Notes under the pieces: generated by a model
What the model was told of the DNA's origin: nothing
The model's database searches: none
What the model saw: the letters and a program-made list of their open reading frames with translations, nothing else
Part shown: positions 9,291 to 49,324 of the stretch, one piece after another
Position numbering within the stretch: the first letter of the stretch is position 1
Layout: each line of letters opens with the position of its first letter
Assembly (NCBI RefSeq): GCF_947568905.1
Contig: NC_079171.1
Location: forward strand, 31,062,001-31,126,000
DNA: 64,000 nucleotides
Reading direction: 5' to 3'
From: Ostrea edulis
Lineage: Eukaryota
Translations under genes and position numbers: made by a program

Positions 9291-10412
9291 GCTGTGGGAT
9301 ATTCTAAACGAATATTGAGTTCATTATAAAGATCACATGTCGCGGTATAGGAAGCTTATCAATGATATCCCAACTGCCTATTTTGTATTGTTTATATGAG
9401 TTATGAGATTGGTCACTGTTCGTTATCTTCACCTTTCATCCATAGCCTTCATATAGTCTAATCGATTGTTTCTGTCCTTAAAACCACGTTCCCTCCGCAT
9501 AAACTACCTATCTCTTATCACAACATAGTTCAGTATAGACTTAAGACAAGTATTTGGATGTCTTAAGATTTTTAACAATCTTAAGATATGACAGTTAAAT
9601 TGTGAAACAGCTAGAATGGATATTATGACTAATTTTGGTCTTAAGACAGATCTTAGTCGTAAGATAGTTTTGTTACACTGGCCCCAGGACATTGCACCTC
9701 ATGGGTTTGAAAATGAATTATTATGCACTAAATGCACTGGAAGTGAATGTGACTTCATTGTTGGCTAGTGAAGGTTGTTGTCAAACAAACCACATGTACA
9801 ATGGATCATTGGCTGCGTGAGTCGGTATTTACTTACGATGCTCTGTATGGTACTCTGTAATGTACATGTAATCTAACTGATTGTCGTAATCTCTTAATAT
9901 ACGGCCTCTTCAGATTCTCCTCTCTTGCACACACAGATAGGCGACAACCACATTTATGCACACACAAAGTTAAGATATATTTTAAGTTTATCTTAGGACG
10001 GGTTTGGTGATGTCTTAACTTTAGGAGAAACCTTAAGGATATAATTATCTTAGGTTAGGACAGAGTGGATAGTCAAACTTAGGACTAAGATACATCTAAG
10101 TTTATCTTAAGATGTATCTTGTCCTAAGATGGCTTCCATACCATGCCTACTGCTCATTTTGAAAATAAATATATTTACGTCATCAATGAGACAGGTAATA
10201 TTTTCATAAAATTCTGAGAGGGGGAGGGGTTTGGTTGTTAAATATATTCATACAATGTACATTTGAAATATCAAACTTAATGGTTGAGCAGCTGTATATT
10301 TTACTTGATAAGTGTAATTTCACCTTATCAGTTATTTTAACTTGTCAACACCTCTAACTAAGATTCCCTTTTTCATTGGCAGTGAACACTTCGTGTGACT
10401 CCGGCATCAGGA

Positions 10413-12134
10413 ATGCATCCCTGGCGTTGTGCTCAGGAAGTCATCCAGTGTTACCTCTGTGAAACTGTCCCCATACAGGGTCGCTGTGAACTTTGTCGTA
10501 AAAATCTATGTGAAGCCTGTGCTGAGAAGCATGTTTCGGATTCTTCTAAAATACACAATGTCGTGTCCTATTTACGCAGGAAATTTACTCCAAAATGTCC
10601 AGACCACCCAGAAAAACACTGCGAACTTCACTGCAAAACATGTGACGTTAATGTCTGTTCTTTCTGCATATCATCTGGTAAACACGAAGGACACACACAA
10701 TCAGATATTCTGGAAAATTTCAGCTCTGAAACAAGGAATTTACAAAAAGATTTGGAAGAATTGGAGACCAAAATTTATCCCAGATATAAAGACATGGCCT
10801 CCGATATCCAAACAGAGAAATCCGAGTTTGAAACGAATTACTGGAAACTAACAACAGCTGCCGACCAACAAGGAGAAGTCTGGTACCAAGAGATCACCGC
10901 CATTGTCAACCAGCGGAAATCTCACATTGAGGAGATGAAAAACAAACACCTATCTACCTTGGATAAAAATACAGAAGAAATTACACAGAAAATCACTGAA
11001 CTCAAACAGATCATTTCCGACTTGAAATCAATACTAGAATCATATGACGTCTCATTAGCCTCTACTTACAAATCTAGGAATTCCGAATTTAGAAAATTAC
11101 CGCCAAAAGTCCGAGTTACATTACCGAATTTTTCTCCTCAGAAAATAAACAAAGATCAGGTCAATGAAATGTTTGGTTCTCTGTCACCACTATCCATTAA
11201 CACAGAACATAGCGACATAATAAAGTCACCAGAAGCTGTATCCTCTCCACCATTCAAACTATTGAAGTCACCAGAAGCTTTATCGTTTTCCCTAGTCAAA
11301 CCACTTCTTGATGAACCGCGACTTACCGCCACCATACACACTGGGTACCAGAATCTATTCAGTGTTAGCTGTCTCAATGAAAAAGTCTGGACACGTGGGA
11401 ATGACACGATTCTGAAGCTCCTCAACCTCAAGAGTAAACTCCTGACATCAATGCAAACCAAGTCAGGGAATGATCCAGGGGACATTGCAGTGACACGGGA
11501 CGGAGATCTTCTTTATACTGACTACAGAAATAAGACTGTAAACCTAGTGAAGAATAAACAGATACAGATAGTTATCAGATTACAAAGGGGGTTGATACCT
11601 TTTAAACTACAGGGATGGAGGCCTCTCAATGTCTGCATTACCTCCTCCGATGATCTCCTGGTTACCATGATTAGTGATGATGAAACACAATCCAAAGCTG
11701 TCCGTTACTCTGGCTCCACAGAAAAACAAACAATTCAGTTTGATGATCAGGGTCGTCCTCTCTATTCAACTGGTAATTTCAGTAAATACATCAGGGAGAA
11801 CAGGAACCTGGATATATGTGTGGCTGATTGGGGAGCTAGTGCAGTAGTGGTGGTCAATCAGTCTGGAAAATTTCGATTTAAATACACTGGTCATCCATCG
11901 GATACCAAGAAATCATTTTATCCACGCGGCATCATTACAGACAGCCAGAGTCACATCCTGACATCAGACTTTGTCAATCACCGTATCCACATCCTAGATC
12001 AGGACGGACAGTTCCTCCGTTACATTGACAACTGTGATTTACGCGATCCATGGGGTTTATGTGTGGACATCAGAGATAACCTCTTTGTGGCTGAGCGTGA
12101 CACTGCTAAAGTGAAGAAAATCCAATACCTATAA
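10413..12134 (+). CDS. B-box/B-box/coiled-coil/NHL-type beta-propeller protein (RING-less TRIM2/3/71-like), 573 aa, single coding exon
   Basis: B-box CYLCETVPIQGRCELCRKNLCEACAEKH, second B-box CPDHPEKHCELHCKTCDVNVCSFCISSGKHEGH, coiled coil, C-terminal NHL-like repeats (PRGIITDSQSHILTSD...RIHILDQDGQFL, PWGLCVDIRDNLFVAE). The first ATG after acceptor ttcattggcag (10382) is 10413, the same position as the paralog's ATG. Confidence 0.9.
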   Translation: MHPWRCAQEVIQCYLCETVPIQGRCELCRKNLCEACAEKHVSDSSKIHNVVSYLRRKFTPKCPDHPEKHCELHCKTCDVNVCSFCISSGKHEGHTQSDILENFSSETRNLQKDLEELETKIYPRYKDMASDIQTEKSEFETNYWKLTTAADQQGEVWYQEITAIVNQRKSHIEEMKNKHLSTLDKNTEEITQKITELKQIISDLKSILESYDVSLASTYKSRNSEFRKLPPKVRVTLPNFSPQKINKDQVNEMFGSLSPLSINTEHSDIIKSPEAVSSPPFKLLKSPEALSFSLVKPLLDEPRLTATIHTGYQNLFSVSCLNEKVWTRGNDTILKLLNLKSKLLTSMQTKSGNDPGDIAVTRDGDLLYTDYRNKTVNLVKNKQIQIVIRLQRGLIPFKLQGWRPLNVCITSSDDLLVTMISDDETQSKAVRYSGSTEKQTIQFDDQGRPLYSTGNFSKYIRENRNLDICVADWGASAVVVVNQSGKFRFKYTGHPSDTKKSFYPRGIITDSQSHILTSDFVNHRIHILDQDGQFLRYIDNCDLRDPWGLCVDIRDNLFVAERDTAKVKKIQYL

Positions 12135-16767: not shown

Positions 16768-18177
16768 ATGCACCCACGGCGCAGTGCCCAGGAAATCCTA
16801 CTATGTGACCTCTGTGAAACTGTCCCCATACAGAGTCACTGTGAACTTTGTCATATTAACTTATGCAAGGCCTGTGTTGGGGAGCACCTCTCGGATTCGT
16901 CTGAAAGACACAAAGTTGTACCCTATAAACACAGAAAGTCTACTCCTATCTACCCGAAATGTCCTGATCATGCCGAAAAACGCTGTGAACTTCACTGCGA
17001 GGAATGTGATATTCCTGTCTGTTCTACCTGCGTTACCTCAGGTAAACACAAAGGTCACGAAATATCAGATGTTCTGGAAAAAATCAATTTAAAAACACAA
17101 AGTTTAAAAACAGATTTGGAAGAACTAGAGACCAGAATTTATCCTCGATATGACGAAATGGTTTCCGATGTCCAAATTGAGATAGCTGAGTTAAAAACGA
17201 ATTATGGAAAACTGACAACAGCTGCCGACCAACAAGGAGAAGTCTGGCACCGAGAGATCACCGCCATTGTAAACCAGCGGAAATCTGACATTCAGGAGAT
17301 GAAAAACAAACATTTGGCTGCGCTGAATAAAAACACAGAAGAAATCAAACGGAAAACATTTGAACTAAAACAGATCATTTCCGACTTGAAATCAATACTA
17401 GAATCAAATGACGTCTTCTTAACCTCTACTTACAAAGCCAGGAATTCCGAATTTAGAACATTACCTCCTAAAGTCCAAGCAACATTACCAAGTTTTTATG
17501 CTCAGAAAATAAACAAAGATCAGCTCAATGAAATGTTTGGCTCTCTGTCATCATTATCCATCAACAGAGAAAAACGCGGCTACACAATACCAAAATCATT
17601 GCTTGATGAACCTCGACTCACCGCAACTATAGACACTGGATATACACACCTATACAGTGTCAGCTGTCTGAGTGAAGAACAAGTCTGGACACGTGGGGAT
17701 AAAACAATCATGAAGCTTCTCGATCTCAAAGGTAAAATACTGAAATCAATCCAAACCGAGTTAGGATATATACCACAGGACATATCAGTGACACGAGATG
17801 GAAATCTTGTTTATACCGACACTGATGAAAACACTGTAAACCTAGTGAAGAATAAACAGATACAGACCGTGATAAGACTACAGGGATGGATGCCTTGCTT
17901 TATCTGCTGTACCTCATCTGATGATCTCCTGGTCACCATGATCAGTGATGATGAAACGCAATCCAAAGTTGTCCGTTACTCTGGCTCCACAGAGACACAA
18001 ACCATTCAATTTGATAATCAGGGTCAACCTCTCATAATGCAGATTCAAGTTTGTTCAAATCATGGGCTCCAGGGGTTGGATGGGGCCACAATAGGGGATC
18101 AAAGTTTTACATACAAATATATAGGAAAAATCTTCTTCTCAAGAACCACTGAGCCAGAAAAGCTGATTTTTACATGA
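16768..18177 (+). pseudogene. TRIM-like paralog 2 (B-box/B-box/CC/partial NHL), truncated, with a satellite-derived C-terminus; open for 469 aa
   Basis: Collinear with paralog 1 up to QFDNQGQPL (18033). The ORF then reads into repeat DNA (IMQIQVCSNHG...KLIFT*). The remaining NHL repeats are not found downstream. Confidence 0.8.
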
Positions 18178-18650
18178 AACCTTTTTGACATAGTGCAGAT
18201 TCAAGTTTGTTCAAATCATGGCCTCTGGGGTAGGATGAGGCCACAAGGGGGATCAAAGTTTTACATACAAATATATAGTTAAAATCTTTTTCTCAATAAC
18301 CACTGAGTCAGAAAAGCTGATATTTACAAGAAAACTTTCTGACATAGTGAAGATTCAAGTTTGTTCAAATCATGGCCCCTGGGGGGTAGGATGGGGCCAC
18401 AGGTGGGGGGGGGTCAAAGTTTTACATACAAATATAGGAAAAAGCTTTAAAAATCTTCTTCTCAAGAACCATTGGGCCAAAGAAGTTGACATTTACATGA
18501 AAGCTTTCTGACATAGTGTAGATTCAAGTTTGCAAAGGGTAGTTTGGGCCATAATAGGGACTAAGGTTTTACATGCAAATATATATGGAAAGTCTTCAGA
18601 TATGGGCCAAAGTGACTCAGGTGAGCGATGTGGCCAATGGGCCTCTTGTT
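18034..18650 (-). mobile_element. Non-autonomous Helitron/Helentron-like element with ~165-bp satellite array (about 3 units)
   Basis: Repeating GCAGATTCAAGTTTGTTCAAATCATGG...GGGCCACA...GATCAAAGTTTTACATACAAATAT...TCTCAAGAACCACTGAG. End ...GTGAGCGATGTGGCCAATGGGCCTCTTGTTT. Resembles the oyster Cg170/HindIII satellite-carrying elements (from memory). Confidence 0.75.
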
Positions 18651-18954
18651 TATATAATAATTTCGTTTTTTATTTAGTTTTCGTTTTTTATATAATAATT
18701 TCGTTTTTTCTATAGTAATTTCGTTTTTTATATAATAATTTCGTTTTTTATTTAGTTTTGGTTTGCACTAATGGGCTTCCGTAGTTTTCAGTGTAAATGA
18801 CAGATTAAATCTTGTTATCAGCAGCAATTATTTTTTCTATGCTAGATTTTGTTGTCTGCATGGTACCAGTTTTCACATATCAAAATTTGATTTTTGACCA
18901 TACGTTCCCTTTAATGAGAATAATTCATATCATATTACTGATCACTTGTTACAA

Positions 18955-20794: not shown

Positions 20795-22264
20795 ATAACA
20801 CTCAGATGTTGATATTTCTACAAAAGTATAGCATACTACATAGGAAAAAGTGTCACATATGATCCTCATATGAAGTGAGTTTCATATGAGGATCATATGC
20901 AAGTCATATGTGTATCATATGAAACTCACTTCATATGAGAATCATATGTGACAAACATATGATTCTCATATGTAGAAAATAATATGAATTTCATATGAAT
21001 TGATTTTCATATGATTATCACATGGTATAAATTTCATATGAAAATCACATGATTTTCTCATATAAAATAAATTAATGTGTACCATATATGAATTTTTAAA
21101 AAATAGTATGTCTTCTCTGACAGAGCAAAGTATACCGATAACGTAAATTCTCGCATATTTGAGGGTTTGAGAAAAAACACTGGTTGATTGCTCATTTTAT
21201 GAAAAATGTACAATATTGGTTTAAAATCTTAATGTTGGGAAGGACACAAGTTTTTGAATATCTGCTTTCTAAATCAAAAGTTAACAAGCAAAATTTTGTC
21301 AAGTTATTCAATATATTTTAAGAAATATGTAAAATTTTAACCTTATTTAATCCAGAAAAGGGATTGATCAAAAATGAGAATTGCAACAAATGATAATTGT
21401 TCTTTAAAAAAAAAAGTTTTTTTCTGAACAAAGACAACAGAAATCATTTACTTTTAAAATTTAATTTTAGTGATGAATCCATAAATTAAAACATGTACAG
21501 CAGGAATCCATGATACATTAAAACATGTACAGCATATTCTTTACATAATCACACCATACAGCACATTTTTTTATGTTGGCATAAAAAAAGATCCCCCACT
21601 GGTCAATGAACACAAGTGTGGAGTATAGGTTTAAATATTATTTGCAGCCTTTCAACAGGGGTGGTCACATCCCAAACATGAGTGAAAAATTCTCAAAGGG
21701 ATGTAAAACAAAAGCAAACAAACATGTATACCTATTTCAAAAAATTCTCAGAGCATCAAGGGGATTGCTTGTGCAAGTACACTAAAAATACATACAAAGA
21801 AGATTTATATCAAAAATGACTTTGCACAAGCTGATGGTTTAGAAAAATCAAAACTAGATGGACATTTTAGTGAATATACATTGACTAGAAACAATCTGTA
21901 TCCCCTGGATAACTTGTGTTTAATAAACTTTGTATGCTTGAGTTCAGTCTCCTCTTGTTCAATCCTGGCTGGGGTTTTTCCTTCTTTGATGCTGCAATGG
22001 CACTGGATACAGTGATGAACAAGTGGCATGTAGGAAAGAACATTTGTAATAGGAATAACATCCAAATCCTCAGAGAACTTTATCACAGGACAACCAAGAT
22101 GTGTTGGTCGCTGTATAACCCCCTTTTCAACAATTGCTAATGAACTTCTCCTAGCACCCTGAAGAAAGAGTAGACCACCTTTGAAGATTCCAACTTTAAA
22201 CTGAAAGTGAAGAATATTAAAACATTTTATAATATCATATCATGATCAATGGTAACATACAATG

Positions 22265-23105
22265 TATCGTTCGTACAGAATTGCAGTCATCAAATTTCAT
22301 TACTTTTTCATGACCTCAACCCATTTTCAATGACCTCAAAGACAGACAACAGACTGATGAATAAGACACAAATATGAGGTCTTTCTTACCACATGAAAAC
22401 GACTTAGCAGTTGGACATATCAGGAAATATAATTTGAAAAAGTTTCTTCACATTTTCATTTGATTTGTACGAATTATACATTGTTACTGTATGTATAGTC
22501 CACAAAATGTGATTTAATGATGCTGTTTCTGAATAAACTGCACTATGGGGATAGAACAATCTAAGTTTTCTCCTCTTTAATGTCATTTTTTAAGATAGTA
22601 CTCAAATCTCGTTGATCCACTTCTCTCTGAAGTTTTACGTGTTTCGTTGAACATCAATGTGAAGTCAGTGCCCCCACCCCCATGTTTCCCATATCCACCA
22701 CCTTCAAGCACGTTGTGCAGAACGCTCTATCTATTTCTCTTAACAGCCCTGACCTACTCAAAATTGTGCTCCCACTCAGAAGAATAAACACATTTCCAAG
22801 GCACGACTCATCAGACTGCATACCGGTATATGTGCCATTACCTGTAGCACACTTGTTCATTCGCACCTAAATGCTCACAGTAATGGAAATTACTTTGTGT
22901 CAAGCCCTTTTATGATACAGATTATAACCAACATGGTTTTAGTAGTTCCGGATTAGGCGAAACAATATCCATTTATTTTAAAGGAGGAAAAAGTGAAATC
23001 CCATGGCTTTCCATGACCTAGCTCTCTCAAAATTCCCTTACTTTCTCAAGACCTAAAACCAAATTTCATGAGTGAGTTCAAATTCCATGACCCGTACGAA
23101 CCATG
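22265..23105 (-). mobile_element. Internally deleted hAT-like element with a transposase N-terminal remnant, nested in an intron of the CACTA transposase
   Basis: Ends related to CAGGGTTCGTAC (rc CATGGTTCGTACGGGTCATGG at 23105; ..CGTTCGTACAG at 22268). Minus strand reads KCVYSSEWEHNF/AFCTTCLKVVDMGNMGVGALTSH*CSTKH and ILWTIHTV..YNSYKSNENVKKLFQIIFPD/KSFSCG. Confidence 0.6.
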
Positions 23106-23980
23106 TACATGCATTACACTATAAGGTTTAGTATCTTTGTTCCAAACTTGAAGTAATTCATTGGTAACCGTTATAATACACTCATGAGGAACATATATAT
23201 CAAATAGCAATTGGAAATTAAGAGAGTGATTTTAAAAAGAATGCACCTCATCCTCTCTACTCAAATACATGATGGACATACCCTCAGCAATACTTGATCC
23301 ATCTTTACATCTACACATTTGGTAGCTGATCATCTTCCCTTCCAAACAGGGGGATGGGATCCCTAGGTCAATAAGACCCTGCAATAGGAGGCATTGGTGT
23401 TGGAATGCTGACATATCTTGCAGCTTTGTTTTGTTGTTGGCTGTACGAAGTGGTCTCAAAAGCAAAGGCTTCTCACAGTCTTGTTTGATTTCTGATAGAT
23501 TTCCTATATTAATGTAAAGAAAATTATGGATGCAAAGCTTTCAGTTTTGCTAAAGCATTACCAGTACTTGATTGTTTCAGGCCAAATAAACCTTCTTAAA
23601 ACATATTGAAATAGTTTTTGCTGTCAGATATCTAGAACATGTACTATATTATTCTACAAGAATATTCATAACATTCATGCATGCAAATAAATGTGTACAC
23701 ACTTGCAGACATTCCAAAACATCTCTGGATGTGACATAGTCTTACTATGATATTTTGCTGAGGTTCATATAAATAATAATATAATTCTTTACATAAATTT
23801 TCAAAAAGTCTAATTTCTTATAAACTAATTTGGTATTTATATAGAGTTAAATTGACATACCAAAAAAGTTGCACATTTCCTTCCTAGTGGATAAATCCTG
23901 CACCTCCTTTGTACACTGCCTCCTACAACATTGCAATTTCAGTATGAAAACGTGCTTACATCAGAAGCATACCTCATTCA

Positions 23981-24245
23981 AAAACAAGAGGCCCATGGGC
24001 CACATCGTTCACCTGAGTCACCTTGGCCCATATCTGAAGACTTTCCATAGATATTTGCATGTAAAACCTTAGTCATTAATATGGACCCAACTACCCCTGG
24101 AGGCCACTAATTTTGCATACTTGAATCTACACTACGTCAGAGAGCTTTCATGTAAATGTCAACTTCTTTGGCCCAATGGTTCTTGAGAAGAAGATTTTTA
24201 AAGATTTTCCCTATATTTGTATGTAAAACTCTGACCCCCCCCCCC
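23981..24245 (+). mobile_element. Helitron/Helentron-like fragment abutting the disrupted transposase exon
   Basis: AAAAACAAGAGGCCCATGGGCCACATCGTTCACCTGAG..., near-exact reverse complement of 18440-18650. Confidence 0.75.
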
Positions 24246-24686
24246 CCCCAGATATGAATATTAATTATCAAAGTCGTTTACTATATATTTTCATCAAAAT
24301 GTCTATCAAAAATGAATGATCTTTCCTTGCAAGAATGTAGTACCATAATACTTTCTTTACAGATTAATTCATCTATATGCTACTCACAAATTTTTTCAAA
24401 TCCTTCCCTTGTCTGCTGTTCACATTCTTGGTAATGTTAAATTTCACTCGCTGATGGGCATCTAGAGCAGTTAAATGGCTTTCAAGTGATGTTGCCTGAG
24501 TATCAGTTAATGAATCAATGCAGACTTTAAAAAGATGTTTTGATGTTCCAAGATGAAAAAGATGAAGAAGTCCAGATGGTACATCTCTATCAAATAAAAA
24601 CAAGTAAATATGGTAATCACTCGGATTTAAAAAAAAAAAAGAAGAAATTCTCATTTAAGCCTTTGGTTCGGGTGAGCTAATATTAA

Positions 24687-25636
24687 AGCTGTACTACCCG
24701 ATGTTCATGTATTTTTTTTGTACATAATTGCTTTAAAGCAGATTAATTTCTTTATAAAGTTATTAACTTTCCCTTAATTACATGCTTAAAAACATCTGCA
24801 TGTAAAAGAATACAGTGCGAATATTATTTAGAAAATAAATATAGTGGGTGCATATATAAATCATCCCATAATAGACGTCTATAAATAGAACCACCCGCAT
24901 CAGGGGAATCCCAACACGATGTATTAACTCAAACGCAACTGTCTAGTTTTAAGGCTGAAAGAGCGTAAAACAAGGAATTACTAGGAGGTATTTGATTTTT
25001 TTTTTCTATTAAAGTTATGGTGCGGTACTGTTATGTGGCGTCGGTGGCCGAGTGGTTAGGCTGTCAGACTTTTGACCGAAAGGTTCGAGTCCTGGTCGAG
25101 GCAGGGCTGACGTGTCCTTGGGAAAGGCAATTTACATGAATTTCCTCACTCCACCGAAGTGTAAAAGGGGTACCTGGCTATAGACAGTGAAAGATATTGT
25201 TAGAATGTTAGTGCTCTAGCGCTTGTAATGGCAGCTTGCACTGTATGCTTCCTAGGAGGCTGAGAAAGTTCTAGTTTGATATAAGGTCTGCCGGGGTAAT
25301 AATGTACATTACATTTGTAAAGCACCTTTGAGCGTACATAGTGTATGAAAAGGGTGCTATATAAATATGGTATTATTATTATAACAAAATACACAGTTTT
25401 ACACAGATAAGACCACCGATGATCTGAAAGTTTGAACTGGTAACATGACTGTCACTTGAAATGGCAGAGTACGTGACGCGGTTATTTGTATACATCGATT
25501 TAAAATCAAATAATTTGGGTTAAAACAGGTGAAATAATTTATGATATGTCGTACAGCCTCATAACTACATACGTGCGATGATTTAATAGCGCTTTTAGGA
25601 GATGGAAAAAAATATTGTAATTCGGACCATACAGCT
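24687..25636. mobile_element. TTAA-flanked Kolobok-like element in transposase intron 5
   Basis: TTAA|AGCTGTACTACCCG ... TTCGGACCATACAGCT|TTAA; carries a nested SINE. Confidence 0.65.
25037..25383 (+). mobile_element. CORE-SINE with L2-like tail
   Basis: GGTGGCCGAGTGG A box, GGTTCGAGTCC B box, CORE-like GTGTCCTTGGGAAAGGCAATTTAC...AAAGGGGTACCTG, tail TTGTAAAGCACCTTTGAG...GCTATATAAAT..(TAT)n. A tail fragment also lies at ~58615-58685 (minus). Confidence 0.75.
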
Positions 25637-26743
25637 TTAACAAAAGTGCTTCAAATATTCACCTTTACTATAACGTCAAATGATTTCCCTGGAACAGGTT
25701 ATAATTCATTTTCGGGGAAGGAGACAACTTTTCATCAAGTGTTCGCTTTACGAACTACGTACCTATGGGGATTAAGGATGTCCCAGAAAGGGTTGTCATA
25801 CTCCTTCACACCAAATGATGCCCAAGGGGATATGATTTCATGGAGGCGACTGCCGTCCCTTTGCTCACGTACAAGACCAGTTTTCCGTGGATACCTTAAT
25901 GAGAATAATTTAGGGTTAAATTACAATTAAGTCAAACCTCCTTATCTTGAACTCAACCGGACCAAAATTAAACTTAGAAATATGCGAGGATTCAAGAAAA
26001 CAAGGTAAAAAAAAAACATAACGGAAAAAGCGGTTGGGATTGCCAGTTCACATTGACACATGCATCCCTGATATCAGTTAGTGTTTGAGATAACAAAGAT
26101 CTGCATCAATTGTATATTACTGAAGTTCATAAAGTGGTGTGGCCTGTGACAGTAATAGACCTCAGTTATTTATGAACCACTTTCACTACATTTGGTTATA
26201 CTATGGTTTTACCTTTTCATTCTAATTATAAATAAGTGTTCATATTTATACATACCTGGCAATGTTCTTTGATATTGAAGGATTGCTCAAGTGGAGTTTG
26301 GCAATTTCAGTTGGTTTCAGAATGTATAAAGGTAAACCATTGTCATCTTCTCCCTGATATTACAATAAATCTGAATACAACTTTTTGGCAATGTAAATAA
26401 AATATCAATATTATAAAAAAAAAATTGAAATGTTAAGTTAAGGGTTGGGAATATGGTTATATTTCCTGACACCTTTCCTATGTAGGAAATATTGGGTAGA
26501 TTAAAGGTTTTTTTTTCAGCATCGAAATACTGTGTAATATATCAGTTGAATAAAATCAATAGATATATATTTCATAATGAGAAAAAAAAAACCAAATGTT
26601 TTATACTCATAAACATTTTTTATAACTGCAATCTATAAAAAAAAGTCTGAATCTGTCCTCAGCTACTCTTAAAATAAATTCCATATCCAACAACAAAACA
26701 CTGATTGGATCATCATGAATCCAAGTGTGATGAGTATGCATTT

Positions 26744-27318
26744 CAAGGGTAGATCCATGGGGGTGGGTGGAGGGGGAGGGGTCCAGACATCCGCTAAAGG
26801 GGGTCTTTAGCGGACCAAAAAATTTAATTTATTCAATTTCAACGAGACTTTTAGTAAAAATGATATGAAAGGTGGATACTTATATGCAATTACATTATTC
26901 AAATTTATCAACACCATGTAGTTTATCAGGATAAATGGGACGAAACACTGATACATGTGTATATATTTACGATATTTTATTTTCGTCAGATACAAGTATC
27001 ATTTAAAAATTCTTAAAAAGTATATATAATATAAAATATTTTACCGCAGAGATTCTGGGGGCCTATGCAGCCCCAGCCCCCCCCCCCCCCCTCCACCTAA
27101 TTGCAAGTAACCTTTAAACCAGCTCTTTTTTATCATTGAAAATCGGATGTGAATAAGTCCATAACAATGACTAGAATATGGGAAACAGGTAGTAAATTTA
27201 ATGTTAATATGTGCACAATCAAAAGGCGTAAATAGGGTGGGGGTGGAGATTGTGAAACACCTAAAAGATCAAGTGCTAGACCCCCCTCCCCCTTCACAAA
27301 TTTCTGGGTCCGCCTTTG
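26744..27318. mobile_element. MITE of the CAG(G/T)GGCGGATC family with 5-bp TSD, in transposase intron 3
   Basis: cattt|CAAGGGTAGATCCA ... TGGGTCCGCCTTTG|cattt. Confidence 0.7.
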
Positions 27319-28416
27319 CATTTTTACTCATACCAAATGAATGATGAATCTTACCTTAGCTATCAAGCTGTTTACATCCAAGTCCCCAAATTTCATGTTT
27401 CTGATATGATTTAACGATGGTACATTGGGAACACCAACTTCTTTTAAAATGAACCACACATACTTTGCCACTTCCAAACTCTTTTAAAGAAAACAAAATG
27501 GAATTGACAGGAATGACATTTTCAGATACTGTGGTTATACATTATTTTTACTGTTCAAAAACAAGTAGAGTTGGGGAATATCACTGATGCAAATTTCAGT
27601 ATCAATATAAGAATTACTGACTTGGTCATGTATCAAAGCACATTACTAAAACAAATATTTAATTAATTCAAATGTCATATAATCATACCTCCCACACACA
27701 CAAAAAAATGCATTTTCAGAGTTGATGATTAGGGAAATATTTGCGATCAGTTGTTCTAAACAAAGTATAATTCGATTCGATCTGTTTGTAATGAATGTGA
27801 AAATTCTAGTTTGTTTGGTTTTTTTAAATTTGGATTTTAATATGATTTACACATTTTACTTACAATGTGATGTGTTGTACTATGAAGCAATCCATATAAA
27901 AGAAGATTCAGCTTGTCTGGAAATGGATACCACTTGCTGTCATTTGTTTGGTCCTCGTATGTTTGGCTCTCAGAGTCACTACTGAAGCCTTCATTCTAAA
28001 AACAAAGTGTCAATATTTTCCTATCCTTTGTAAACATGAAACTAAACGGTCTAAAATTTGCACTCAACAACTTCTTGTAAATTAATAAAATTTCTAAATA
28101 ATGATACAGAATATTCAAAGTACAATACCAATAGATCATAATCCTCTGTCTCCGAGACGGGTTCAGTCTCCCCATCGGTATCCGAATCGTCATCGTTAAT
28201 TAACGTTGTGAAACTGTTTTCTAAAATTTCTGCGTCTCGTTGAAACGAACGCGAACTAAACTTCGTCGTATTGTCGAGATTTTCCTCCTTGTCACAACAG
28301 GTGTTCATCAGGCTTTTGAAGCTGTCATTTAATAGGTGTTTTCTTGTAAGATTGTGTCGATTTAAATGATTTATTTTGTCAAATGACACATCACAGACGT
28401 TGCAGCGAAAAGCCAT

Positions 28417-28559
28417 CGCGCCAACTGTCAGTGCCAAAATCAATGTTCAGAAAACGCTTTCACACCGTTTGCATTACTTGCCATCGGTTCAAGCGCGAAG
28501 TTAACCAAGCATATTTTAGCACGCGCTAGCAGACGATCAAAACATAAAGGTTCGGAAAG
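28417..28559. promoter_or_regulatory. Putative compact bidirectional promoter of the CACTA-like element
   Basis: Only 143 bp separate the two divergent ATGs (28416 minus, 28560 plus). Locally CpG-rich (CGCG at three positions). Confidence 0.55.
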
Positions 28560-31500
28560 ATGGAGAGAGACTACTTGGCAGTAAGTATCGCTAAATTTGT
28601 TTATATTCAATACACTGACCCATATCTATGAATAAAATGTTTAGATTTCAATGCAATACAAGTATCTATGCGTGTTTACTCAATGTCTAAGGGCAGTAAC
28701 TCGAACAAAGATGAGGAGTGGATCTAAGAACTGTCTGATATTTTGGTTTTATCATAAACAAACAGGAATCATAAATAAACAATTCGTTAACTTTTAATTG
28801 GCATTCAGTCATTAAGGTGCATATGGTATTTATTCACAGGACTCTCAAGATGACCTATTCGAAAACTCACAAGTGGGGCCTCTCCCAAATCTCTCAGATT
28901 CTCCACAATTAGCTCGAGTAGTTCCTGAATCACCCCCTGCTCCTCCCACTGTTGACATTCCTCCACAGGATAAAATTATGGCAGTGTTGTCAGAAATTTG
29001 TAAGGAACTTAATTTCTTTCTTTTTTTAATTATTGTAATGATTAACTTATTCAAAAGTATCAATTTATTCAAAAGTAATATATTATTTTTCAGTAAAAAT
29101 TGTTTATGTCTAAATATTAATGTTTTCTGGGGGGAATAAATAAATAAATAAGTGATTATAATATAATTGATGCTTGTTTGTTTGATACATATTTCTCCTA
29201 GAATTAGAATTAAAAGCACAGTTTGACCAAAATCAAAACCTTCATAAATAAGGAATATATTTAATGTTCTTTTAAGTGAAAGAACAGAAAAGGCTGACAG
29301 AGGAGGTTAACAAATTGAGAGGAGAGGTCCAAAGGATTAAGAACAAAGAAGCACTCTCAATGACCAAAGTGTCAGTAGAAGGGTCAACTATTGAGGTATG
29401 GTGTTTTATCATTTGTAATGAAAGTCATATAAGATTAACAGTTAATATGATCCATTTTATATTCCAACAGAAAGTGAATTAAATTAATTAAAACCTACGG
29501 TATGATGAAAACTTTTAATTTTAGTAAAAGCATTTATGAATCATTTATTTACAAAAGCCAATAACATTTTACTTACCTTATGCTAGTATAACTGCAGGCC
29601 AGTAATATATTTAATATAGCTCACCTGAACTGAAACCTCAAGTGAGCTTTTCTGATCAACCGTCCGTCCATCTGTCTAGCTTCCATGGCCCCTGGGGGTC
29701 GTATATGGGGTCACAATAGGAGATCAAAGTTTTATATTGAAATATATTGCAATTTTTTTTTAAAATCTTCTTTTCAAGATCCACTGGACCAGAAAAGATG
29801 AAACTCAGATATACAAGCTCTCTGAAGTAATGTAGTTTGTAAATTGTTCAAATCATGGTCCCTGGGGGTTGTATGGGGCCACAATAGGGACTTGTGATTT
29901 TTTACATCAAAATATATAGGAAAAAACCCTTTATAAATCTTCAAATCAAGAACACTGACCCAGAACAGATGAAAGCCTTGTGTGAAAAATTCCTGACATA
30001 GTGTAGCTTGTAAATTGATAAAATCATGGTCCCCGGAGGCAGGGTGCGGCCACAATAGGCAATTTAATTTTTAATTAGCAAAATACAGGGAGAATGTTAA
30101 AACTTCTCTCCTCAAGAGCTGCAAAGCCATGAAAACTTATATTTATGTGAAAGCCTCCACAGCTGGCATAAATTCAATGAAGTTTGTTGAAATCTTGAAC
30201 CCCAACGACAGGGTGGGGCCACAATAGATGATAAGAGTTTGACAATGGAATTTATTGGAAAGGGTTTTGAAAGCTAATTCTCAAGAATAGCAAAGCCATC
30301 ATTTATCATATTTACATGGAAGCATTAATTGTCAGGAAGTGTACATTCAATTGTGTTCAAATTATGGCCCCTGGGTTTTAAGGTGGTGCCACAAAATGCA
30401 ACAGTAAGCATTGTGGTTCATGGGCCTCTTATTTAAAGCCATCATATACCTGTTTTATTTTATATATGCTGTGAATTAATGAATTAATTGTATTTTCACA
30501 GAAGGAGTATATAAATTTCCTAAAAGTCAAATTCAGCGTATTTCCGTGGATCAATTTCCAAGATCAAGAAATACAGGTTTGTTAGTTGATATAATCCTGA
30601 TGAACAGTGAAAATTGTTAACTGGTTAAATACTTCAAAAGAGGTGCAAAAGTGTTCACCTTGCTAACAAAATTAAGAATGAGTACCTTAAATTGGGACAT
30701 ATTGTTTTTATTTCAAAAGTGAAAAGTACATTTTTTGCTGTAAGAGGCAACATTTCCAATTTCAATTATCAGTTCACCTGAGCCAAAGAGCTTTTCTGTT
30801 CGAAGGGTGTCTGGCATCCATCTGTCTGTTTGTCCGTTCGTCTGTAAACTTTTCACATTTTTCACTTCTTTTCAAGAACCACTGACCCATTTTTAACCAA
30901 ACTTGCCAACAAGCATCCTTGTGTGAAGTGGATTTCAGTTTCTTCAAATGAAGGACCATGCACCCTCTTCCAAGGGTTGATTTTTGTTGAATTAAAGAAA
31001 ATTGAATTGCATTTTTCATAACATCTACTCAAGAACCACCGGACCAGAAAAGATCAAACTTCTGTAAAAGCTTCAATACATTAGTGTAGATTCAAGTTGT
31101 TTAAATCATGATTCCCGGGGCTAAGGCAGGGTCACAATAGGCAAATAAAGTTTTATATAGGAATATAACGGAAAAATCTTTACATCTCTTCTTCTCAAGA
31201 AGTGCAAAGCCAAGATCATAAGTGGTCATGTAACATGTTCAAACATTTAATTTATACCTTTGATGTTTAAATAAATAAATCATTTAAGTATTATTTCACA
31301 CTGAAACATTATTCGGATGTAAATGCGTGTTGATAAATGATGTAATCTATCATAATGCCCTTTATGGGATTTTGATGATGTGACCAACTCATATTTTTAC
31401 ATCCCAATAAAAGTTTTGAAATGATACCTTATTTCGCAATAAAATACTTCTAAGAACTGGTGCAACCAAACTGCATCAGCCAAATTTTACAAAGGTTAAT

Positions 31501-32831
31501 GAAGCTATATTATATTGTTATGCCTGCACTGAGAAGCAAAGACATTGACAAATTAACCCCCGTATGTTGTTTTTATTTCAAAAACAGGTATGAATTTTCT
31601 AACTGTATGATAACATTTTTTAGGGAATGCTGAAGGACTTTACCAGTAAAGCAGGTTGGGCAGAAAGAAGTCATGTCCTGGGGGTTTTGTCGAGCTTTGG
31701 CTCGACAAAATTTACTTATTACAGGAACCAGACAAGAGCAAAGGTAATTAAGAAACCATGTGTAGTAAAAGGTGATGTCTTGATTTAATGTAAATGTATT
31801 TCATTACAAATTAAGACATAAAACAATGTTAAACGTTTTAATGTAAAGGAAACTTTTTTCAGTGGGGTGAACTATTAAATACACATAATTCATGGAAATA
31901 ATTTGATATTTGATTAATTGTATATTATGTTATTTGAAATATCTAGTTAACAGTATACATATGCTTGAAGTCATTATTCCTTTTTGTAGTTAATGGGCAA
32001 CAAGGAGATTGATGTGGAGGGACTTTCTTTAAAGTCCCTCCACAACTACCTGTGGAAGTGTTTTTTGCCACCAGCAATTCCACTTGTGGACATAGAGAGG
32101 GAACGCTTGACCTTATTGCTGGTAATTAATTTCATGCAATATTGTTTGTTTTACCATTTTCAACCACATTAGTTATACAGTATTTTTCAAAATGCTCTAT
32201 ATATTAAGATAAAGATTTCGTTTATACCACATTTGCCTAGCAATAATTTATAGATTCATAAATTTGATATGTGAAAGAAATATTTAATTCTCTTTCTCTT
32301 GCCTGCATGGGAATCAAATTTTTGTCTCATGTAAATTCAGAAATTAAAGTAGACTTTAAAAATTCTAAACACTTTCATTTTAATTGCAATGAGACTACAT
32401 TGTACTACAATCTGAAGTTTATTTATTTAAAAAAAAAAATAAGAAATGGAAATGGCATGCATTTACTCGTTGTCACATGTCGCGGTCAAAATGTACCATC
32501 CTCTCCCATTCTGGAAAGAGCTATGAGCGAACTCCAGATTTTGGCTTGAGACAATAGCATTTCCTTAGAAGGAAATCATTTCACTTTAGCATTGATTCAC
32601 TTAAAGGCATGCATAATACCTGAAACAATACTTGTACATGTTTATTTCTAATTTCCATAGAGATCTTTCTGCGCATCACAGAAATTGTTCCGTAAAGGAG
32701 GAACAAGTGGCTTTGCTTTTTGGGCTGAATTCCATAAGTTTGTGGACACCGTCAACAAGGATGGTAGACTGGACAAGTGGGAGAAATTGGAGGAAAAGGA
32801 GGAGAGAAGAATTGAGAAATATTTATCATAA
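28560..32831 (+). CDS. Intact 7-exon gene, 265-aa protein of unknown function (transposon accessory, TnpA-like by position)
   Basis: Exons 28560-28580, 28840-28999, 29277-29395, 30502-30576, 31624-31743, 31990-32121, 32661-32831. All GT-AG, phases compatible, 798 nt with no internal stop: MERDYLADSQDD...(P-rich)...ILKEQKRLTEEVNKLRGEVQRIK (coiled-coil-like)...FAFWAEFHKFVDTVNK...RIEKYLS*. Confidence 0.8.
29618..30432 (-). mobile_element. Helitron/Helentron-like satellite-bearing element in intron 3 of the accessory gene
   Basis: AGCTCACCTGAACTGAAA...GTGAGCTTTTCTGATC start, ~165-bp degenerate units, GTGGTTCATGGGCCTCTT end. Confidence 0.7.
30771..31230 (-). mobile_element. Helitron/Helentron-like element in intron 4 of the accessory gene
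   Basis: AGTTCACCTGAGCCAAAG...CTGTCTGTTTGTCCGTTCGTCTGTAAACTTTTCAC..., same family as 2205-2900. Confidence 0.6.
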
Positions 32832-34404
32832 CTTTTTAAATTAAGATTTTATAAATTCAAGTTATTGTTTATTGTATATTTGTGTATTTCTTCTTTAAAA
32901 TCATGTGCAGTTATTGATTTACTTGTTACTTTTAAATATGATATGTTTTTTATATGTGTATGAAAGGAACTGAAATTTAGCACAAAATATAAGTATCGAC
33001 AAGTGCTTTGTCTTCTTTTCGGTGAAAATTTCACTTTTTATAAATGTGAATCTTTCATTCTGATTTCAAAAGTTATGTAAATATGCACTGTCAAATCTTT
33101 TATTTCTGTTCATCGTTGAAGCCGTTCCATATCTATAAGATTGAGATATTTTAGAGAATATTGAGTAATCATTTTTTTGTACTTTGCATTGGTATTTAAT
33201 CAAGAAGTAGTTGTAGAATGAATAGAAATACTTGATTTCCAGCATCTGCATATCACATAATTAAAGTACACATACATGTCTCATATGATTTACATATGAG
33301 TTTCCTTACATATGATTCTCATATAACATATTAACACAGCATGCACACAAAACCTTCATATGTGAATCATATGAAGTCCCTTACATATGATATACATATG
33401 TGAATCATATGTAAATCATATGAAACACATCATATGATTCACATATGATGCCCTTTTTTTATGATTCTCATATGAAGCTAATCATATGATCCACATATGA
33501 AAATCATATGTGGATCATATGTGGCAAGCATGCCTGTGTATAATTTAAACCTTAGTCAACAAATGATATCCTATCCAGAATCCAAAGTCAGGGGCGCAAG
33601 CTGATTAGTAAGGGGTTCTAGGGGGCGCCATGAAGTTCCCTTAGAAGTTCTAGCTTTTACACGCAATGTTTACCTTGTTGCCCTGTTACCTCAAGGCCCC
33701 CCTGAGGGGGGGGGGGGGGAGGGGGAGGGGGTGAATAAGCTTCCAGAAGCTTATAAGCAGACCCTTTTTAGTAACAAGTTCCCCAATACGGGTTCTTTTT
33801 GATTCGGAAGATATCAAATTGTACATTTTTGCACTCCTTTTACTTTTTGAATTAAAAAAAAGTTCAATATGTTTTAAAACTTCTTATTATTTTTTATAAG
33901 ACTTGAATTTGCGATTTTATGTTGTTTTAACGATTGTACATATCGCTCACGTGATTATATAAATAATAAGATACGTTTACGACCTCTAGAATGATTTATT
34001 TATCATCTCCTTTTTCTCCTTTTTCTGTATTCGTTAGAAATATAGATACTTTTAAAATCCCATAATATAACTATTATTGACCTGTAAGTTATCTAAGAAA
34101 TAAAAATTTCTTGAAGAATGGTCAAATAACAGACTTTTGAAATTTATTCCTAATAAAACTTAAGTTTTATTTTTCACCAAGGCAAAGCATAATGAAATTC
34201 CATGAAAAAAATGGGTTGTTTTTTTTTCAAAATTTTCAATTATAAATCATTTCTTCTCACAAACGTCTTGGTCTCACTTTTTCTAATGATTTAAAATGGT
34301 TTGTGTATATCAATGGTATTGTAAACAGGGGCGGATCCAGGAATTGCGGTTACGGGGGCGCCACTTTATGAGGCAGGGGGTCTGGGCCGGGCCGCCCTGA
34401 GGCA

Positions 34405-38769: not shown

Positions 38770-49324
<10,555 letters not shown>

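What the first reader, a model, noticed from the sequence alone, without database searches (positions are those of the whole stretch)
28560..32831. Intact 265-aa transposon accessory gene in an otherwise old, invaded element: candidate domestication
Seen: seven exons, 12 canonical splice sites and 798 nt with no stop or frameshift. Architecture: acidic/Pro-rich disordered N-terminus, a heptad segment (ILKEQKRLTEEVNKLRGEVQRIK), then a ~170-aa C-terminal domain ending FAFWAEFHKFVDTV...KWEKLEEKEERRIEKYLS. Two Helitron-like insertions (0.8 and 0.46 kb) both sit in introns, the TIRs have 8 mismatches, and the partner transposase is broken. Inference: the gene is under purifying selection, either for the host or as a trans-acting regulator binding the CATATG arrays. 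I do not recognise the C-terminal domain.
Basis: partly seen in the sequence, partly recalled or inferred. Interest (0 to 1): 0.75.

Follow-up and report, generated by a model that had tools for sequence, protein, structure and literature searches.

The report
Young oyster transposon's intact helper gene
The intact 265-aa gene is the standard second gene of a multi-copy Plavaka-type DNA transposon of oysters and scallops, and it is still intact here because this copy is young, not because the oyster has adopted it.

Summary
The seven-exon, 798-nt, 265-aa gene model is real. All 12 splice sites are canonical. Two junctions appear in spliced contigs. Orthologues from other oysters support the whole model, exon 1 included. 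RefSeq annotates it as Ostrea edulis LOC125662548, "uncharacterized protein".

Domestication is not supported. The gene lies inside a terminal-repeat-bounded element (window 20837-33540) that has at least 20 copies or fragments in this genome. Sister copies are about 98-99% identical, and two of them carry the same intact ORF. Exons are no better conserved than introns between young copies. Copies 3-12% diverged carry stops and frameshifts. The intronic repeat insertions and the terminal-repeat mismatches are shared across the family, so they are not signs of age.

The window copy has two deletions, one shown to be private to it, that remove the transposase catalytic core. A sister copy keeps those exons.

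Homologues in Crassostrea, Magallana, Saccostrea and Argopecten sit head-to-head with a transposase. In three of these loci that gene hits Pfam Plavaka. dN/dS across subfamilies is 0.25-0.36, so the protein is selected as a transposon gene.

It matches no Pfam family. A confident AlphaFold model shows an all-helical domain whose first three helices resemble a homeodomain. That suggests, without proving, that it binds the CATATG arrays.

The scan noted this element before, on this same stretch only.

The parts
20837..33540 (.). Whole element: a 12.7-kb internally deleted copy of a Plavaka-like (CMCT-clade) DNA transposon. Termini read TA-CAYAGG...CCTGTG-TA.
   Evidence: Similarity to the sister copy on C6 and to many other copies starts at 20837 and stops at 33540/33541, with unrelated flanks beyond.
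20837..21040 (+). Left terminus plus the subterminal array of 13 CATATG motifs, mostly spaced 11 or 16 nt.
   Evidence: The C. virginica element has the same kind of array.
33282..33540 (-). Right subterminal array of 16 CATATG motifs plus the right terminus.
   Evidence: The C. virginica element has the same kind of array.
28560..28580 (+). Accessory gene exon 1 (7 aa, start codon).
   Evidence: The same N-terminal residues are seen in oyster orthologues P0055, P0056 and P0058. No read evidence shows exon 1 being spliced; intron 1 is retained in two contigs.
28840..28999 (+). Exon 2: acidic, proline-rich disordered region with the conserved DSQ..[DE]LF motif, and the start of the heptad helix.
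   Evidence: The exon 2/3 junction 28999|29277 is present in a spliced contig (record 8).
29277..29395 (+). Exon 3: the heptad (coiled-coil) segment.
   Evidence: helix 50-80 in the orthologue model.
30502..30576 (+). Exon 4: first helix of the helical domain.
   Evidence: (P0068 reads across the exon 3/4 and 4/5 joins).
31624..31743 (+). Exon 5: helices 2-3, including the conserved KF..YRNQ.R.K stretch (candidate recognition helix).
31990..32121 (+). Exon 6: middle of the helical domain.
   Evidence: the exon 6/7 junction is in spliced contig record 13.
32661..32831 (+). Exon 7: the last helices, with the conserved FW.EF and KWE.L..EE.RIE.Y motifs, and the stop codon.
28420..28559 (.). Spacer of about 140 bp between the two divergent start codons. 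Presumed bidirectional promoter (inferred).
   Evidence: The same tight head-to-head spacing occurs in other species.
21820..28419 (-). Transposase remnant. Exon blocks homologous to the C. virginica transposase lie at 28419-28267 (C2H2 finger), 27986-27861, 27483-27346, 26368-26249, 25896-25816, 25812-25762, 24588-24379, 23468-23244 and 22230-21820. The catalytic-core exons are missing.
25809..25816 (.). Deletion junction found only in this copy. About 3.2 kb is missing relative to the C6 sister copy, including the exons with the first D (..NLFIDDTS..) and the second D plus the C(2)C motif (..ADFNM..FCPKC..).
   Evidence: Every other copy in the genome splits at this point and only the window bridges it.
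24249..24249 (.). Second deletion point. About 1 kb is missing relative to the C6 sister copy, including the exons with the H(3)H motif (..KTHLMTHLV..) and the HGPP..EDVFEK block. Whether other copies share it was not tested.
29600..30430 (.).
   Evidence: Depth is about 100-1000 times that of neighbouring sequence. It is present in all 92-98% copies. Helitron identity was not tested.
30770..31230 (.). High-copy interspersed repeat inside intron 4 (0.46 kb).
   Evidence: Related repeats also lie in the second family and in the C. virginica locus.

Best explanation
The 265-aa gene is the regular second ('accessory') gene of a Plavaka-like cut-and-paste DNA transposon family. This family belongs to the CACTA/EnSpm-Mirage-Chapaev-Transib clade and lives in oysters and scallops.

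The gene is transcribed divergently from the transposase, with about 140 bp between the two start codons. The protein has three parts:
- a disordered acidic N-terminus with a conserved DSQ..[DE]LF motif;
- a coiled-coil helix, probably for oligomerisation;
- a compact seven-helix domain whose first three helices look like a homeodomain.

The most likely role (inferred, not shown) is to bind the 11-nt-spaced CATATG arrays at both element ends and help or regulate transposase action there. Maize En/Spm TnpA and the Harbinger Myb-like protein do this for their elements.

The window copy is a young derivative, about 1% diverged from its sisters, that has lost the transposase catalytic core through internal deletions. 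Its accessory ORF is intact because too little time has passed for it to decay. Host selection is not needed to explain it.
For: Copies and boundaries:
- The genome holds at least 20 copies or fragments, at several independent insertion sites. There is also a segmentally duplicated cluster on C10 and a duplicated pair on C5.
- Similarity ends exactly at 20837 and 33540.

Decay pattern:
- The same intact 265-aa ORF is present in the C6 copy and one C5 copy.
- Copies 3-12% diverged have stops and frameshifts.
- Exon and intron divergence do not differ between young copies.
- Rough neutral expectation of an intact ORF is about 0.3.

Selection at the family level:
- dN/dS against older subfamilies is 0.25-0.36 at dS 0.27-0.39.
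- A second family in the same genome has the same layout and 42% identity in the last exon.

Other species:
- Homologues are 'uncharacterized proteins' of Saccostrea, Crassostrea, Magallana, Pecten and Argopecten.
- In four loci outside O. edulis the homologue sits head-to-head with a large minus-strand gene. In three of them that gene hits PF18759 Plavaka: unmarked in Argopecten, faint in Magallana and S. cucullata. The C. virginica neighbours carry no Pfam hit.
- The C. virginica locus has the same termini and CATATG arrays.
- The O. edulis sister copy keeps the DDE core with C(2)C and H(3)H motifs. These motifs define the clade in PMC12730594.

The window copy:
- The 25812 deletion is found in no other copy.

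Expression and structure:
- Spliced contigs show junctions 2/3 and 6/7.
- The AF2 model has pLDDT 92.4. Its best structural matches are Homeo-prospero (Z 8.0, 126 residues aligned) and many DNA-bound homeodomains (Z 5-6.4).
- The homeodomain-like part is basic, with pI 9.5.
Against: - DNA binding is not shown. The structural Z-scores lie in the range that helical models often reach by chance. Foldseek found nothing. No Pfam or PDB sequence match exists.
- The transposase's own C2H2 finger could be what reads the arrays.
- The runs with spliced contigs are only guessed to be RNA. Their contigs carry variants of another copy lineage, so expression of the window copy itself is not shown. Intron 1 is retained in the contigs that cover it.
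- Three of four young copies keep a clean CDS. That is slightly more than the crude neutral estimate predicts. The excess can be explained if part of their divergence arose in still-selected source elements.
- The TA target-site duplication is inferred from flanks only. No empty site was seen.
Confidence: 0.85

Rival explanations
1. Domestication. The host keeps this particular copy's accessory gene for its own use after the transposase died.
For: - The ORF is intact while the partner transposase is deleted.
- RefSeq annotates the gene.
- The window's three private CDS changes are two synonymous and one conservative.
Against: - The gene is still inside complete termini and arrays.
- Sister copies carry the same intact ORF.
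- There is no exon versus intron difference.
- Intactness is unremarkable at about 1% divergence.
- Older copies decay freely.
- All homologues whose surroundings were read (five loci in four other species) are transposase-linked.
- Three private changes carry no statistical weight.
Confidence: 0.04
2. Repressor-producing derivative. A copy that has lost its transposase but still makes the end-binding protein could damp transposition of the family in trans. P-element KP repressors and the suppressor function of TnpA work this way. Such a copy could be favoured by host or element.
For: - The window copy pairs an intact accessory gene with a transposase gutted by deletions, one of them found in no other copy.
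- The predicted domain is DNA-binding-like, and there are dense arrays at both ends.
Against: - No evidence shows this copy is expressed or selected.
- Other derivatives of the family lose the accessory gene instead. Examples are the C1 copy and a roughly 570-bp end-to-end derivative on C2. Deletions therefore look haphazard.
Confidence: 0.08
3. The protein is a transposon gene but not a DNA binder. It could be an adaptor that recruits a host factor through the conserved DSQ..[DE]LF motif, or that escorts or oligomerises the transposase. The transposase's C2H2 finger would then read the CATATG arrays.
For: - A short N-terminal linear motif is conserved from scallops to oysters.
- A coiled coil is present.
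- The structural matches are only middling and Foldseek found nothing.
- The transposase N-terminus has a conserved C2H2 finger.
Against: - The best structural matches are consistently homeodomains.
- The helix that would contact DNA is among the best conserved stretches (KF..[YFW]R[NSA]Q.[KR].K).
- That part of the protein is basic.
Confidence: 0.3

Closest known systems
Plavaka DNA transposons (CMCT clade) with accessory genes: fungal TET/JBP carriers (PMC12730594) and red-algal PAG1-3 carriers (bioRxiv 10.1101/2025.02.11.637652)
   Same: - The transposases next to homologues of this gene hit Pfam Plavaka.
- The sister copy has the DDE core with C(2)C and H(3)H motifs.
- Termini are 5'-CA..TG-3' with a likely 2-bp duplication.
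- The elements are large and carry extra genes.
- In red algae, tandem inverted repeats lie next to one accessory gene, and the preprint suggests its product binds them.
   Different: - The accessory protein here is unrelated by sequence to TET/JBP, SET/methylase or 2OG-oxygenase proteins.
- It is a 240-275-aa helical protein found so far only in oysters and scallops.
- It is arranged head-to-head with the transposase.
- In the papers searched, Plavaka is described only from fungi and algae.
Maize En/Spm (CACTA) TnpA
   Same: An accessory protein of a related transposase clade that binds repeated subterminal motifs at both ends and acts with the transposase (established knowledge).
   Different: - No sequence similarity was detected.
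- TnpA comes from alternative splicing of one transcription unit, not from a divergent gene.
- Binding is not tested here.
PIF/Harbinger Myb-like (SANT/trihelix) protein
   Same: A second, separately encoded three-helix DNA-binding protein that its transposase requires (established knowledge).
   Different: - It belongs to a different transposase superfamily.
- There is no Pfam Myb/SANT match here.
- There is no sign of domestication here.
Homeo-prospero domain / homeodomains (1mij, 6wig, 1k61 and others)
   Same: In the model a three-helix bundle with a long third helix runs on into a further helical bundle. Matches are Z 8.0 over 126 residues and Z 5-6.4 over 53-66 residues.
   Different: - Sequence identity is only 3-12%.
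- There is no profile match.
- The homeodomain's invariant Asn position is N, S or A across this family.
- The scores are within the chance range for helical folds.

Membership tests
Plavaka / CMCT-clade DNA transposon (the element) | Transposase matching Pfam PF18759 (Plavaka) | tested here: inconclusive
   - Pieces from the window and from C. virginica give no Pfam hit on their own.
- The genes head-to-head with homologues of the accessory gene carry PF18759 in Argopecten (unmarked hit) and in Magallana and S. cucullata (faint hits).
- The O. edulis sister copy's exons align to those genes block by block.
- So the feature is met for the family but not measurable on the window copy, whose core is deleted.
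Plavaka / CMCT-clade DNA transposon (the element) | [quoted passage not shown] | tested here: met
   The C6 sister copy has ..ADFNM..FCPKC.. and ..KTHLMTHLV... Both exons are absent from the window because of its two deletions.
Plavaka / CMCT-clade DNA transposon (the element) | 5'-CA..TG-3' termini and 2-5 bp target-site duplication | tested here: inconclusive
   The ends read TA|CAYAGG...CCTGTG|TA in the window, the C6 copy and the C. virginica element. The TA could be a duplication or part of the repeat. No empty site was seen.
Domesticated transposon-derived host gene | The locus has lost transposon termini and is single-copy | tested here: not met
   Both termini and arrays flank the gene. 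There are at least 20 copies or fragments, and two further intact ORFs.
Domesticated transposon-derived host gene | Purifying selection acting on the inserted locus itself | tested here: not met
   Exon and intron divergence do not differ between young copies. Older copies carry stops and frameshifts. Intactness is expected in about 1 of 3 cases by drift. Statistical power is low.
Domesticated transposon-derived host gene | Orthologous position conserved in other species | not testable with these tools
   No related Ostrea genome is available here.
Homeodomain-like helix-turn-helix DNA-binding proteins | Three-helix fold superimposable on homeodomains | tested here: inconclusive
   VIA-align gives Z 8.0 (Homeo-prospero) and Z 5-6.4 (many homeodomains) at rmsd 2.1-3.6 A. 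Foldseek gives no match. The tool warns that such Z values are common for helical models.
Homeodomain-like helix-turn-helix DNA-binding proteins | Sequence-profile match to a homeodomain, Myb or SANT family | tested here: not met
   No such Pfam family appears for any of 25 members, even at E up to 10. No PDB sequence match was found.
Fungal DUF6532 (PF20149) proteins | Match to the Pfam model | tested here: not met
   Language-model look-alike scores are 0.91-0.93. However, hmmscan of family members lists no PF20149 match, and the model finds nothing in this genome. The control genomes did not respond either, so that search is uninformative.

The most novel reading that the evidence does not exclude
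The bivalve protein and the basidiomycete DUF6532 proteins are one ancient, homeodomain-like end-binding partner of Plavaka/KDZ-type transposases. In that case two-component transposition, with the transposase plus a separate array-binding protein, would be ancestral for this clade across fungi and animals. This rests on three things. The protein-language-model look-alikes are fungal DUF6532 clusters. DUF6532 is listed together with Plavaka and KDZ domains among those found in the same Ganoderma genomes (PMC8955403). The protein is conserved as a partner of the transposase from scallops to oysters.
Probability: 0.15. Interest if true: 0.6.

Novelty: new variant of a known kind. Interest (0 to 1): 0.3.

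Why it matters
As a domestication candidate it does not hold up, and that is the main result.

What remains is modest but useful. Plavaka-type transposons are described in the papers I could search only from fungi and algae. Here is an apparently recently active two-gene family of that type in commercially important bivalves. Its partner protein is conserved and completely uncharacterised: about 250 aa, no Pfam family, and a confident helical model with a homeodomain-like half. RefSeq currently lists its copies as dozens of 'uncharacterized protein' host genes in at least seven species.

Recognising them as transposon genes cleans up bivalve annotations. It also offers a tractable system, with dense 11-nt-spaced CATATG arrays and a small candidate binder, for studying how accessory proteins work in the CACTA-related clade.

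Tried and rejected
Searches that found nothing:
- Pfam on each exon, and on ten and then 25 full-length family members: no family.
- Word search with exon 7: nothing within the allowed length range.
- PDB by sequence profile: only chance hits.
- Foldseek against the PDB: nothing.
- Pfam on transposase exon pieces from the window and from C. virginica: only a weak C2H2 hit and one weak CxC5 hint. The Plavaka link came from precomputed hits on intact neighbours in other species.
- PF20149 searched in the own genome: no hit, and the controls were silent too.
- Literature searches for oyster CACTA/EnSpm accessory genes: nothing relevant.

Readings I dropped:
- I first read the 9-kb sister copies as lacking the left half of the element. 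Extending them showed the opposite: they carry 3.2 kb that the window lacks.
- CACTA proper is rejected as a label. The termini are not CACTA, and the likely duplication is 2 bp rather than 3 bp.

Steps not done:
- The joined spliced protein was never sent to a search or fold tool. Searches were made exon by exon by reference. After that I used P0068, which a tool returned and which equals residues 89-265 exactly.
- Exon joining for translation, dN/dS and the simulation was done only inside local scripts on the session's files.
Full report
**1. The observation.**

Reading the sequence and joining the seven proposed exons in a local script gives 798 nt. Every intron is GT-AG. There is one terminal stop and the product is 265 aa. 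Exons are 28560-28580, 28840-28999, 29277-29395, 30502-30576, 31624-31743, 31990-32121 and 32661-32831.

Three independent lines support the model.

- **Annotation.** RefSeq annotates the locus. XP_048750739.2 (LOC125662548, 'uncharacterized protein', 177 aa, on the 77,126,126-bp contig that is this window's contig) came back as P0068. It equals residues 89-265 of the model exactly. The genome is therefore Ostrea edulis.
- **Orthologues.** Full-length proteins from Saccostrea cucullata, Crassostrea virginica and a Magallana transcript contig read straight across all exon joins. They begin with the same residues as exons 1-2, an M..D[FY]LADSQ..[DE]LF start.
- **Spliced contigs.** Two public runs, only guessed to be RNA, contain contigs that skip exactly 29000-29276 and 32121-32660, which are introns 2 and 6 (records 8 and 13). 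Other contigs retain introns 1, 2 and 4. These contigs carry variants typical of another copy lineage, for example the 3-nt deletion at 28908 seen in the C10 copies. They show the family is spliced as predicted, not that this copy is expressed.

**2. The element and its copies.**

- **Arrays.** CATATG occurs 13 times in 20837-21100 and 16 times in 33230-33540. That is about 50 per kb against 0.15-0.33 per kb elsewhere. Spacing is mostly 11 nt.
- **Copy number.** A 2-kb probe from the gene's 3' half finds more than 20 places in the 895-Mb genome. Three are at 98% identity, about nine at 92-93%, and others at 80-88%.
- **Boundaries.** Similarity to other copies starts at 20837 and stops at 33540/33541, and the flanks are unrelated. 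The element is 20837-33540.
- **Termini.** The ends read TA|CAYAGG...CCTGTG|TA in the window, in the C6 sister copy and in a C. virginica relative.
- **How copies arose.** The C10 copies share one flank, and so do the two C5 copies. Those groups arose by segmental duplication. At least a dozen other sites are independent insertions.
- **Deletion derivatives.** Shorter derivatives exist. One on C2 consists of little more than the two ends, about 570 bp.

**3. Is it old and invaded?**

No.

- The window and the C6 copy are 98.1% identical over 7.1 kb that includes both intronic repeat insertions. The 92% copies contain the insertions too. The insertions were therefore already in the element that amplified.
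- The 7 mismatches in the 29-nt termini recur in the C6 copy. The T/C difference at position 5 even recurs in C. virginica. They are a family feature, not decay.

**4. The transposase.**

On the minus strand, starting about 140 bp from the accessory start codon, lie exon blocks that align to a C. virginica locus (L039). That locus has the same arrays, the same termini and the same head-to-head layout.

- **First deletion.** The window jumps from the block at 25896-25816 straight to 25812-25762. In C. virginica these two blocks are 1.8 kb apart. The O. edulis C6 copy has 3.2 kb at that point. That segment contains the exons with the first catalytic D (..NLFIDDTS..) and with the second D and a C(2)C motif (..ADFNM..FCPKC..). 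A probe across the junction shows that every other copy in the genome splits there. Only the window bridges it, with 4 nt of overlap.
- **Second deletion.** At 24249 the window lacks about 1 kb. That segment holds the H(3)H exon and the HGPP..EDVFEK block. Whether other copies share this deletion was not tested.

The window copy cannot move itself, but a sister copy retains those exons.

**5. Superfamily.**

I looked up the surroundings of homologues of the accessory protein in other species.

- In Argopecten irradians, Magallana angulata/gigas and Saccostrea cucullata the gene starts 60-320 bp from a divergent gene of 794-905 aa. That gene hits Pfam PF18759 (Plavaka): an unmarked hit in the scallop and faint hits in the oysters.
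- The second Magallana locus returned shows a Plavaka-hitting gene about 4.5 kb away instead.
- The O. edulis sister copy's exons align to the adjacent genes block by block.

According to PMC12730594, Plavaka belongs with EnSpm, Mirage, Chapaev and Transib in a clade marked by three features:

- C(2)C and H(3-4)H motifs;
- 5'-CA..TG-3' termini;
- 2-5 bp duplications.

The first is seen in the sister copy and the second in the window. The TA flanks are compatible with the third, but no empty site confirms it.

**6. Selection.**

Local codon comparisons gave the following.

- The C6 copy and one C5 copy have the same uninterrupted 265-codon ORF, with 5 and 8 differences.
- The other C5 copy is split by an insertion in exon 2.
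- The C10 copies have 2-3 stops and usually a frameshift as well.
- The second C6 copy, at 23.39 Mb, has a stop and a frameshift.
- The 80-88% copies are badly broken.
- Against those older subfamilies dN/dS is 0.25-0.36 at dS 0.27-0.39.

The protein was therefore under purifying selection while the family diversified, and inserted copies decay afterwards.

Between young copies, exon and non-repeat intron divergence do not differ (5/798 vs 25/2163, p=0.3; 8/798 vs 24/2163, p=1). The window's private CDS changes are two synonymous and one A-to-V, which is too few to test.

A crude neutral simulation at the per-lineage rates seen here (0.6% substitutions, 0.1% indels) leaves ORF and splice sites intact in about 1 of 3 trials. 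At 5% divergence it essentially never does. This matches what the copies show.

**7. A deeper family.**

Exon 7 also finds a second O. edulis family at 42-44% identity. It has the same collinear head-to-head layout and its own RefSeq 'uncharacterized' proteins (P0002, P0029, P0030).

A profile of exon 7 searched against 1.84 billion representatives found 28 proteins. All the named ones are from Ostreidae or Pectinidae. The gene is a long-standing partner of this transposase in pteriomorph bivalves.

**8. What the protein looks like.**

- **No known family.** There is no Pfam family, no PDB sequence relative and no Foldseek match.
- **Models.** The AF2 model of the window's residues 89-265, built with 25 homologues, is confident (pLDDT 92.4, pTM 0.86) and has seven helices. 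A full-length orthologue model shows residues 1-49 disordered, one long helix over the heptad segment, then the domain.
- **Structural matches.** An exhaustive structural comparison puts the Homeo-prospero domain first (Z 8.0, 126 residues aligned, rmsd 3.5 A). Many DNA-bound homeodomains then align to the first three helices (Z 5-6.4). The tool warns that such scores are common for helical models, so this is a lead, not a classification.
- **Features that fit the lead.** The long third helix carries one of the best conserved stretches of the family (KF..[YFW]R[NSA]Q.[KR].K). That part of the protein is basic, with pI 9.5.
- **Untested half.** The last four helices remain essentially untested against known folds.
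- **Fungal look-alikes.** Protein-language-model look-alikes are basidiomycete hypothetical proteins and DUF6532. DUF6532 is listed alongside Plavaka and KDZ domains in certain Ganoderma genomes (PMC8955403). HMM searches do not support the link, so I keep it only as the 'novel case'.

**9. Mechanism.**

*Shown:*
- a two-gene, terminal-repeat-bounded, multi-copy element;
- dense phased CATATG arrays at both ends, conserved between genera;
- a conserved, selected, spliced partner gene;
- a window copy that has lost the catalytic core.

*Inferred:* the partner protein oligomerises through its coiled coil and binds the arrays with its homeodomain-like half. It would then bring the ends together or load the transposase, as TnpA does for En/Spm and the Myb-like protein does for Harbinger.

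*Alternatives:* the protein could be an adaptor acting through the conserved DSQ..[DE]LF motif. Separately, a core-less copy like this one might act as a trans repressor. Neither can be excluded here.

**10. Comparison with what is known, and novelty.**

Accessory genes in Plavaka elements are known from fungi (TET/JBP; PMC12730594) and red algae (PAG1-3, one suggested there to bind adjacent tandem inverted repeats; bioRxiv 10.1101/2025.02.11.637652). Those proteins are different, and I found no description of this bivalve family or its partner protein. I therefore rate it a new variant of a known kind. As a domestication candidate it is ordinary.

**11. Limits.**

- The spliced protein as a whole was never sent to a search or fold tool. 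Exons were searched by reference, and P0068 (returned by a tool) stood in for residues 89-265.
- Only one read-laying run was available, and the runs are contigs of uncertain type.
The second family's full transposase and more target sites could not be examined.
- The scan's earlier notes on this stretch (a CACTA/EnSpm-like two-gene element, and a core-less transposase fusion at 25763-25894) agree with what I found independently.

Noticed in passing
window 10395-12134 and 16768-18177 (+): Two long paralogous ORFs (579 and 469 aa) with B-box-type cysteine/histidine patterns, a coiled-coil stretch and an NHL-like C-terminal part. They look like tandem TRIM-NHL-like genes of the expanded bivalve kind. 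The second ends inside a high-copy repeat.
   Followed up: no
G000 C10, about 40.80-42.73 Mb (loci L005-L009, L011, L012, L015, L016, L021): About nine copies of the element at 92-93% identity lie within 2 Mb. Three of them were checked (L005, L007, L009) and share the same right flank. The element was carried along in a segmental or tandem duplication array rather than transposing nine times.
   Followed up: partly
G000 C2:46174237-46174809: The left and right ends of the element lie almost back to back, about 570 bp in total, at 98% identity. This looks like a miniature (MITE-like) deletion derivative and suggests recent mobilisation in trans.
   Followed up: no
L032-L035 (G000 C3:40.51M, C3:54.79M, C5:70.62M, C8:53.37M): A second, much diverged family of the same two-gene transposon type is present. 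Its last accessory exon is 42% identical and the transposase blocks are collinear. It has its own RefSeq 'uncharacterized protein' models (P0002, P0029, P0030).
   Followed up: partly
window 29600-30430, 30770-31230, 18030-18680, 23980-24250: A very abundant interspersed repeat with internal units of about 170 nt and a hairpin-forming end (around 29617-29658). Contig depth there is 100-1000 times that of neighbouring sequence. Related copies lie in the second family and in the C. virginica locus at other positions.
   Followed up: no
L013:390-470 (G000 C6, inside the 3.2 kb that the window lacks): A tRNA-like stretch (SINE-like insertion) sits next to a 117-nt inverted fragment of the element's own right subterminal region, within an intron of the sister copy's transposase.
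   Followed up: no
window 48983-49324 and 58769-59116 (+): ORFs ending in CCxx-type prenylation motifs. The second also carries a Rab-like stretch (..ETSALD....VE.AF..). They are probably last exons of two small-GTPase genes.
   Followed up: no
P0008 and P0010 (Magallana gigas, Crassostrea virginica gene models): The accessory-protein C-terminus is fused in these annotations to multi-pass membrane-protein-like N-termini. These are most likely chimeric gene predictions across a transposon insertion.
   Followed up: no
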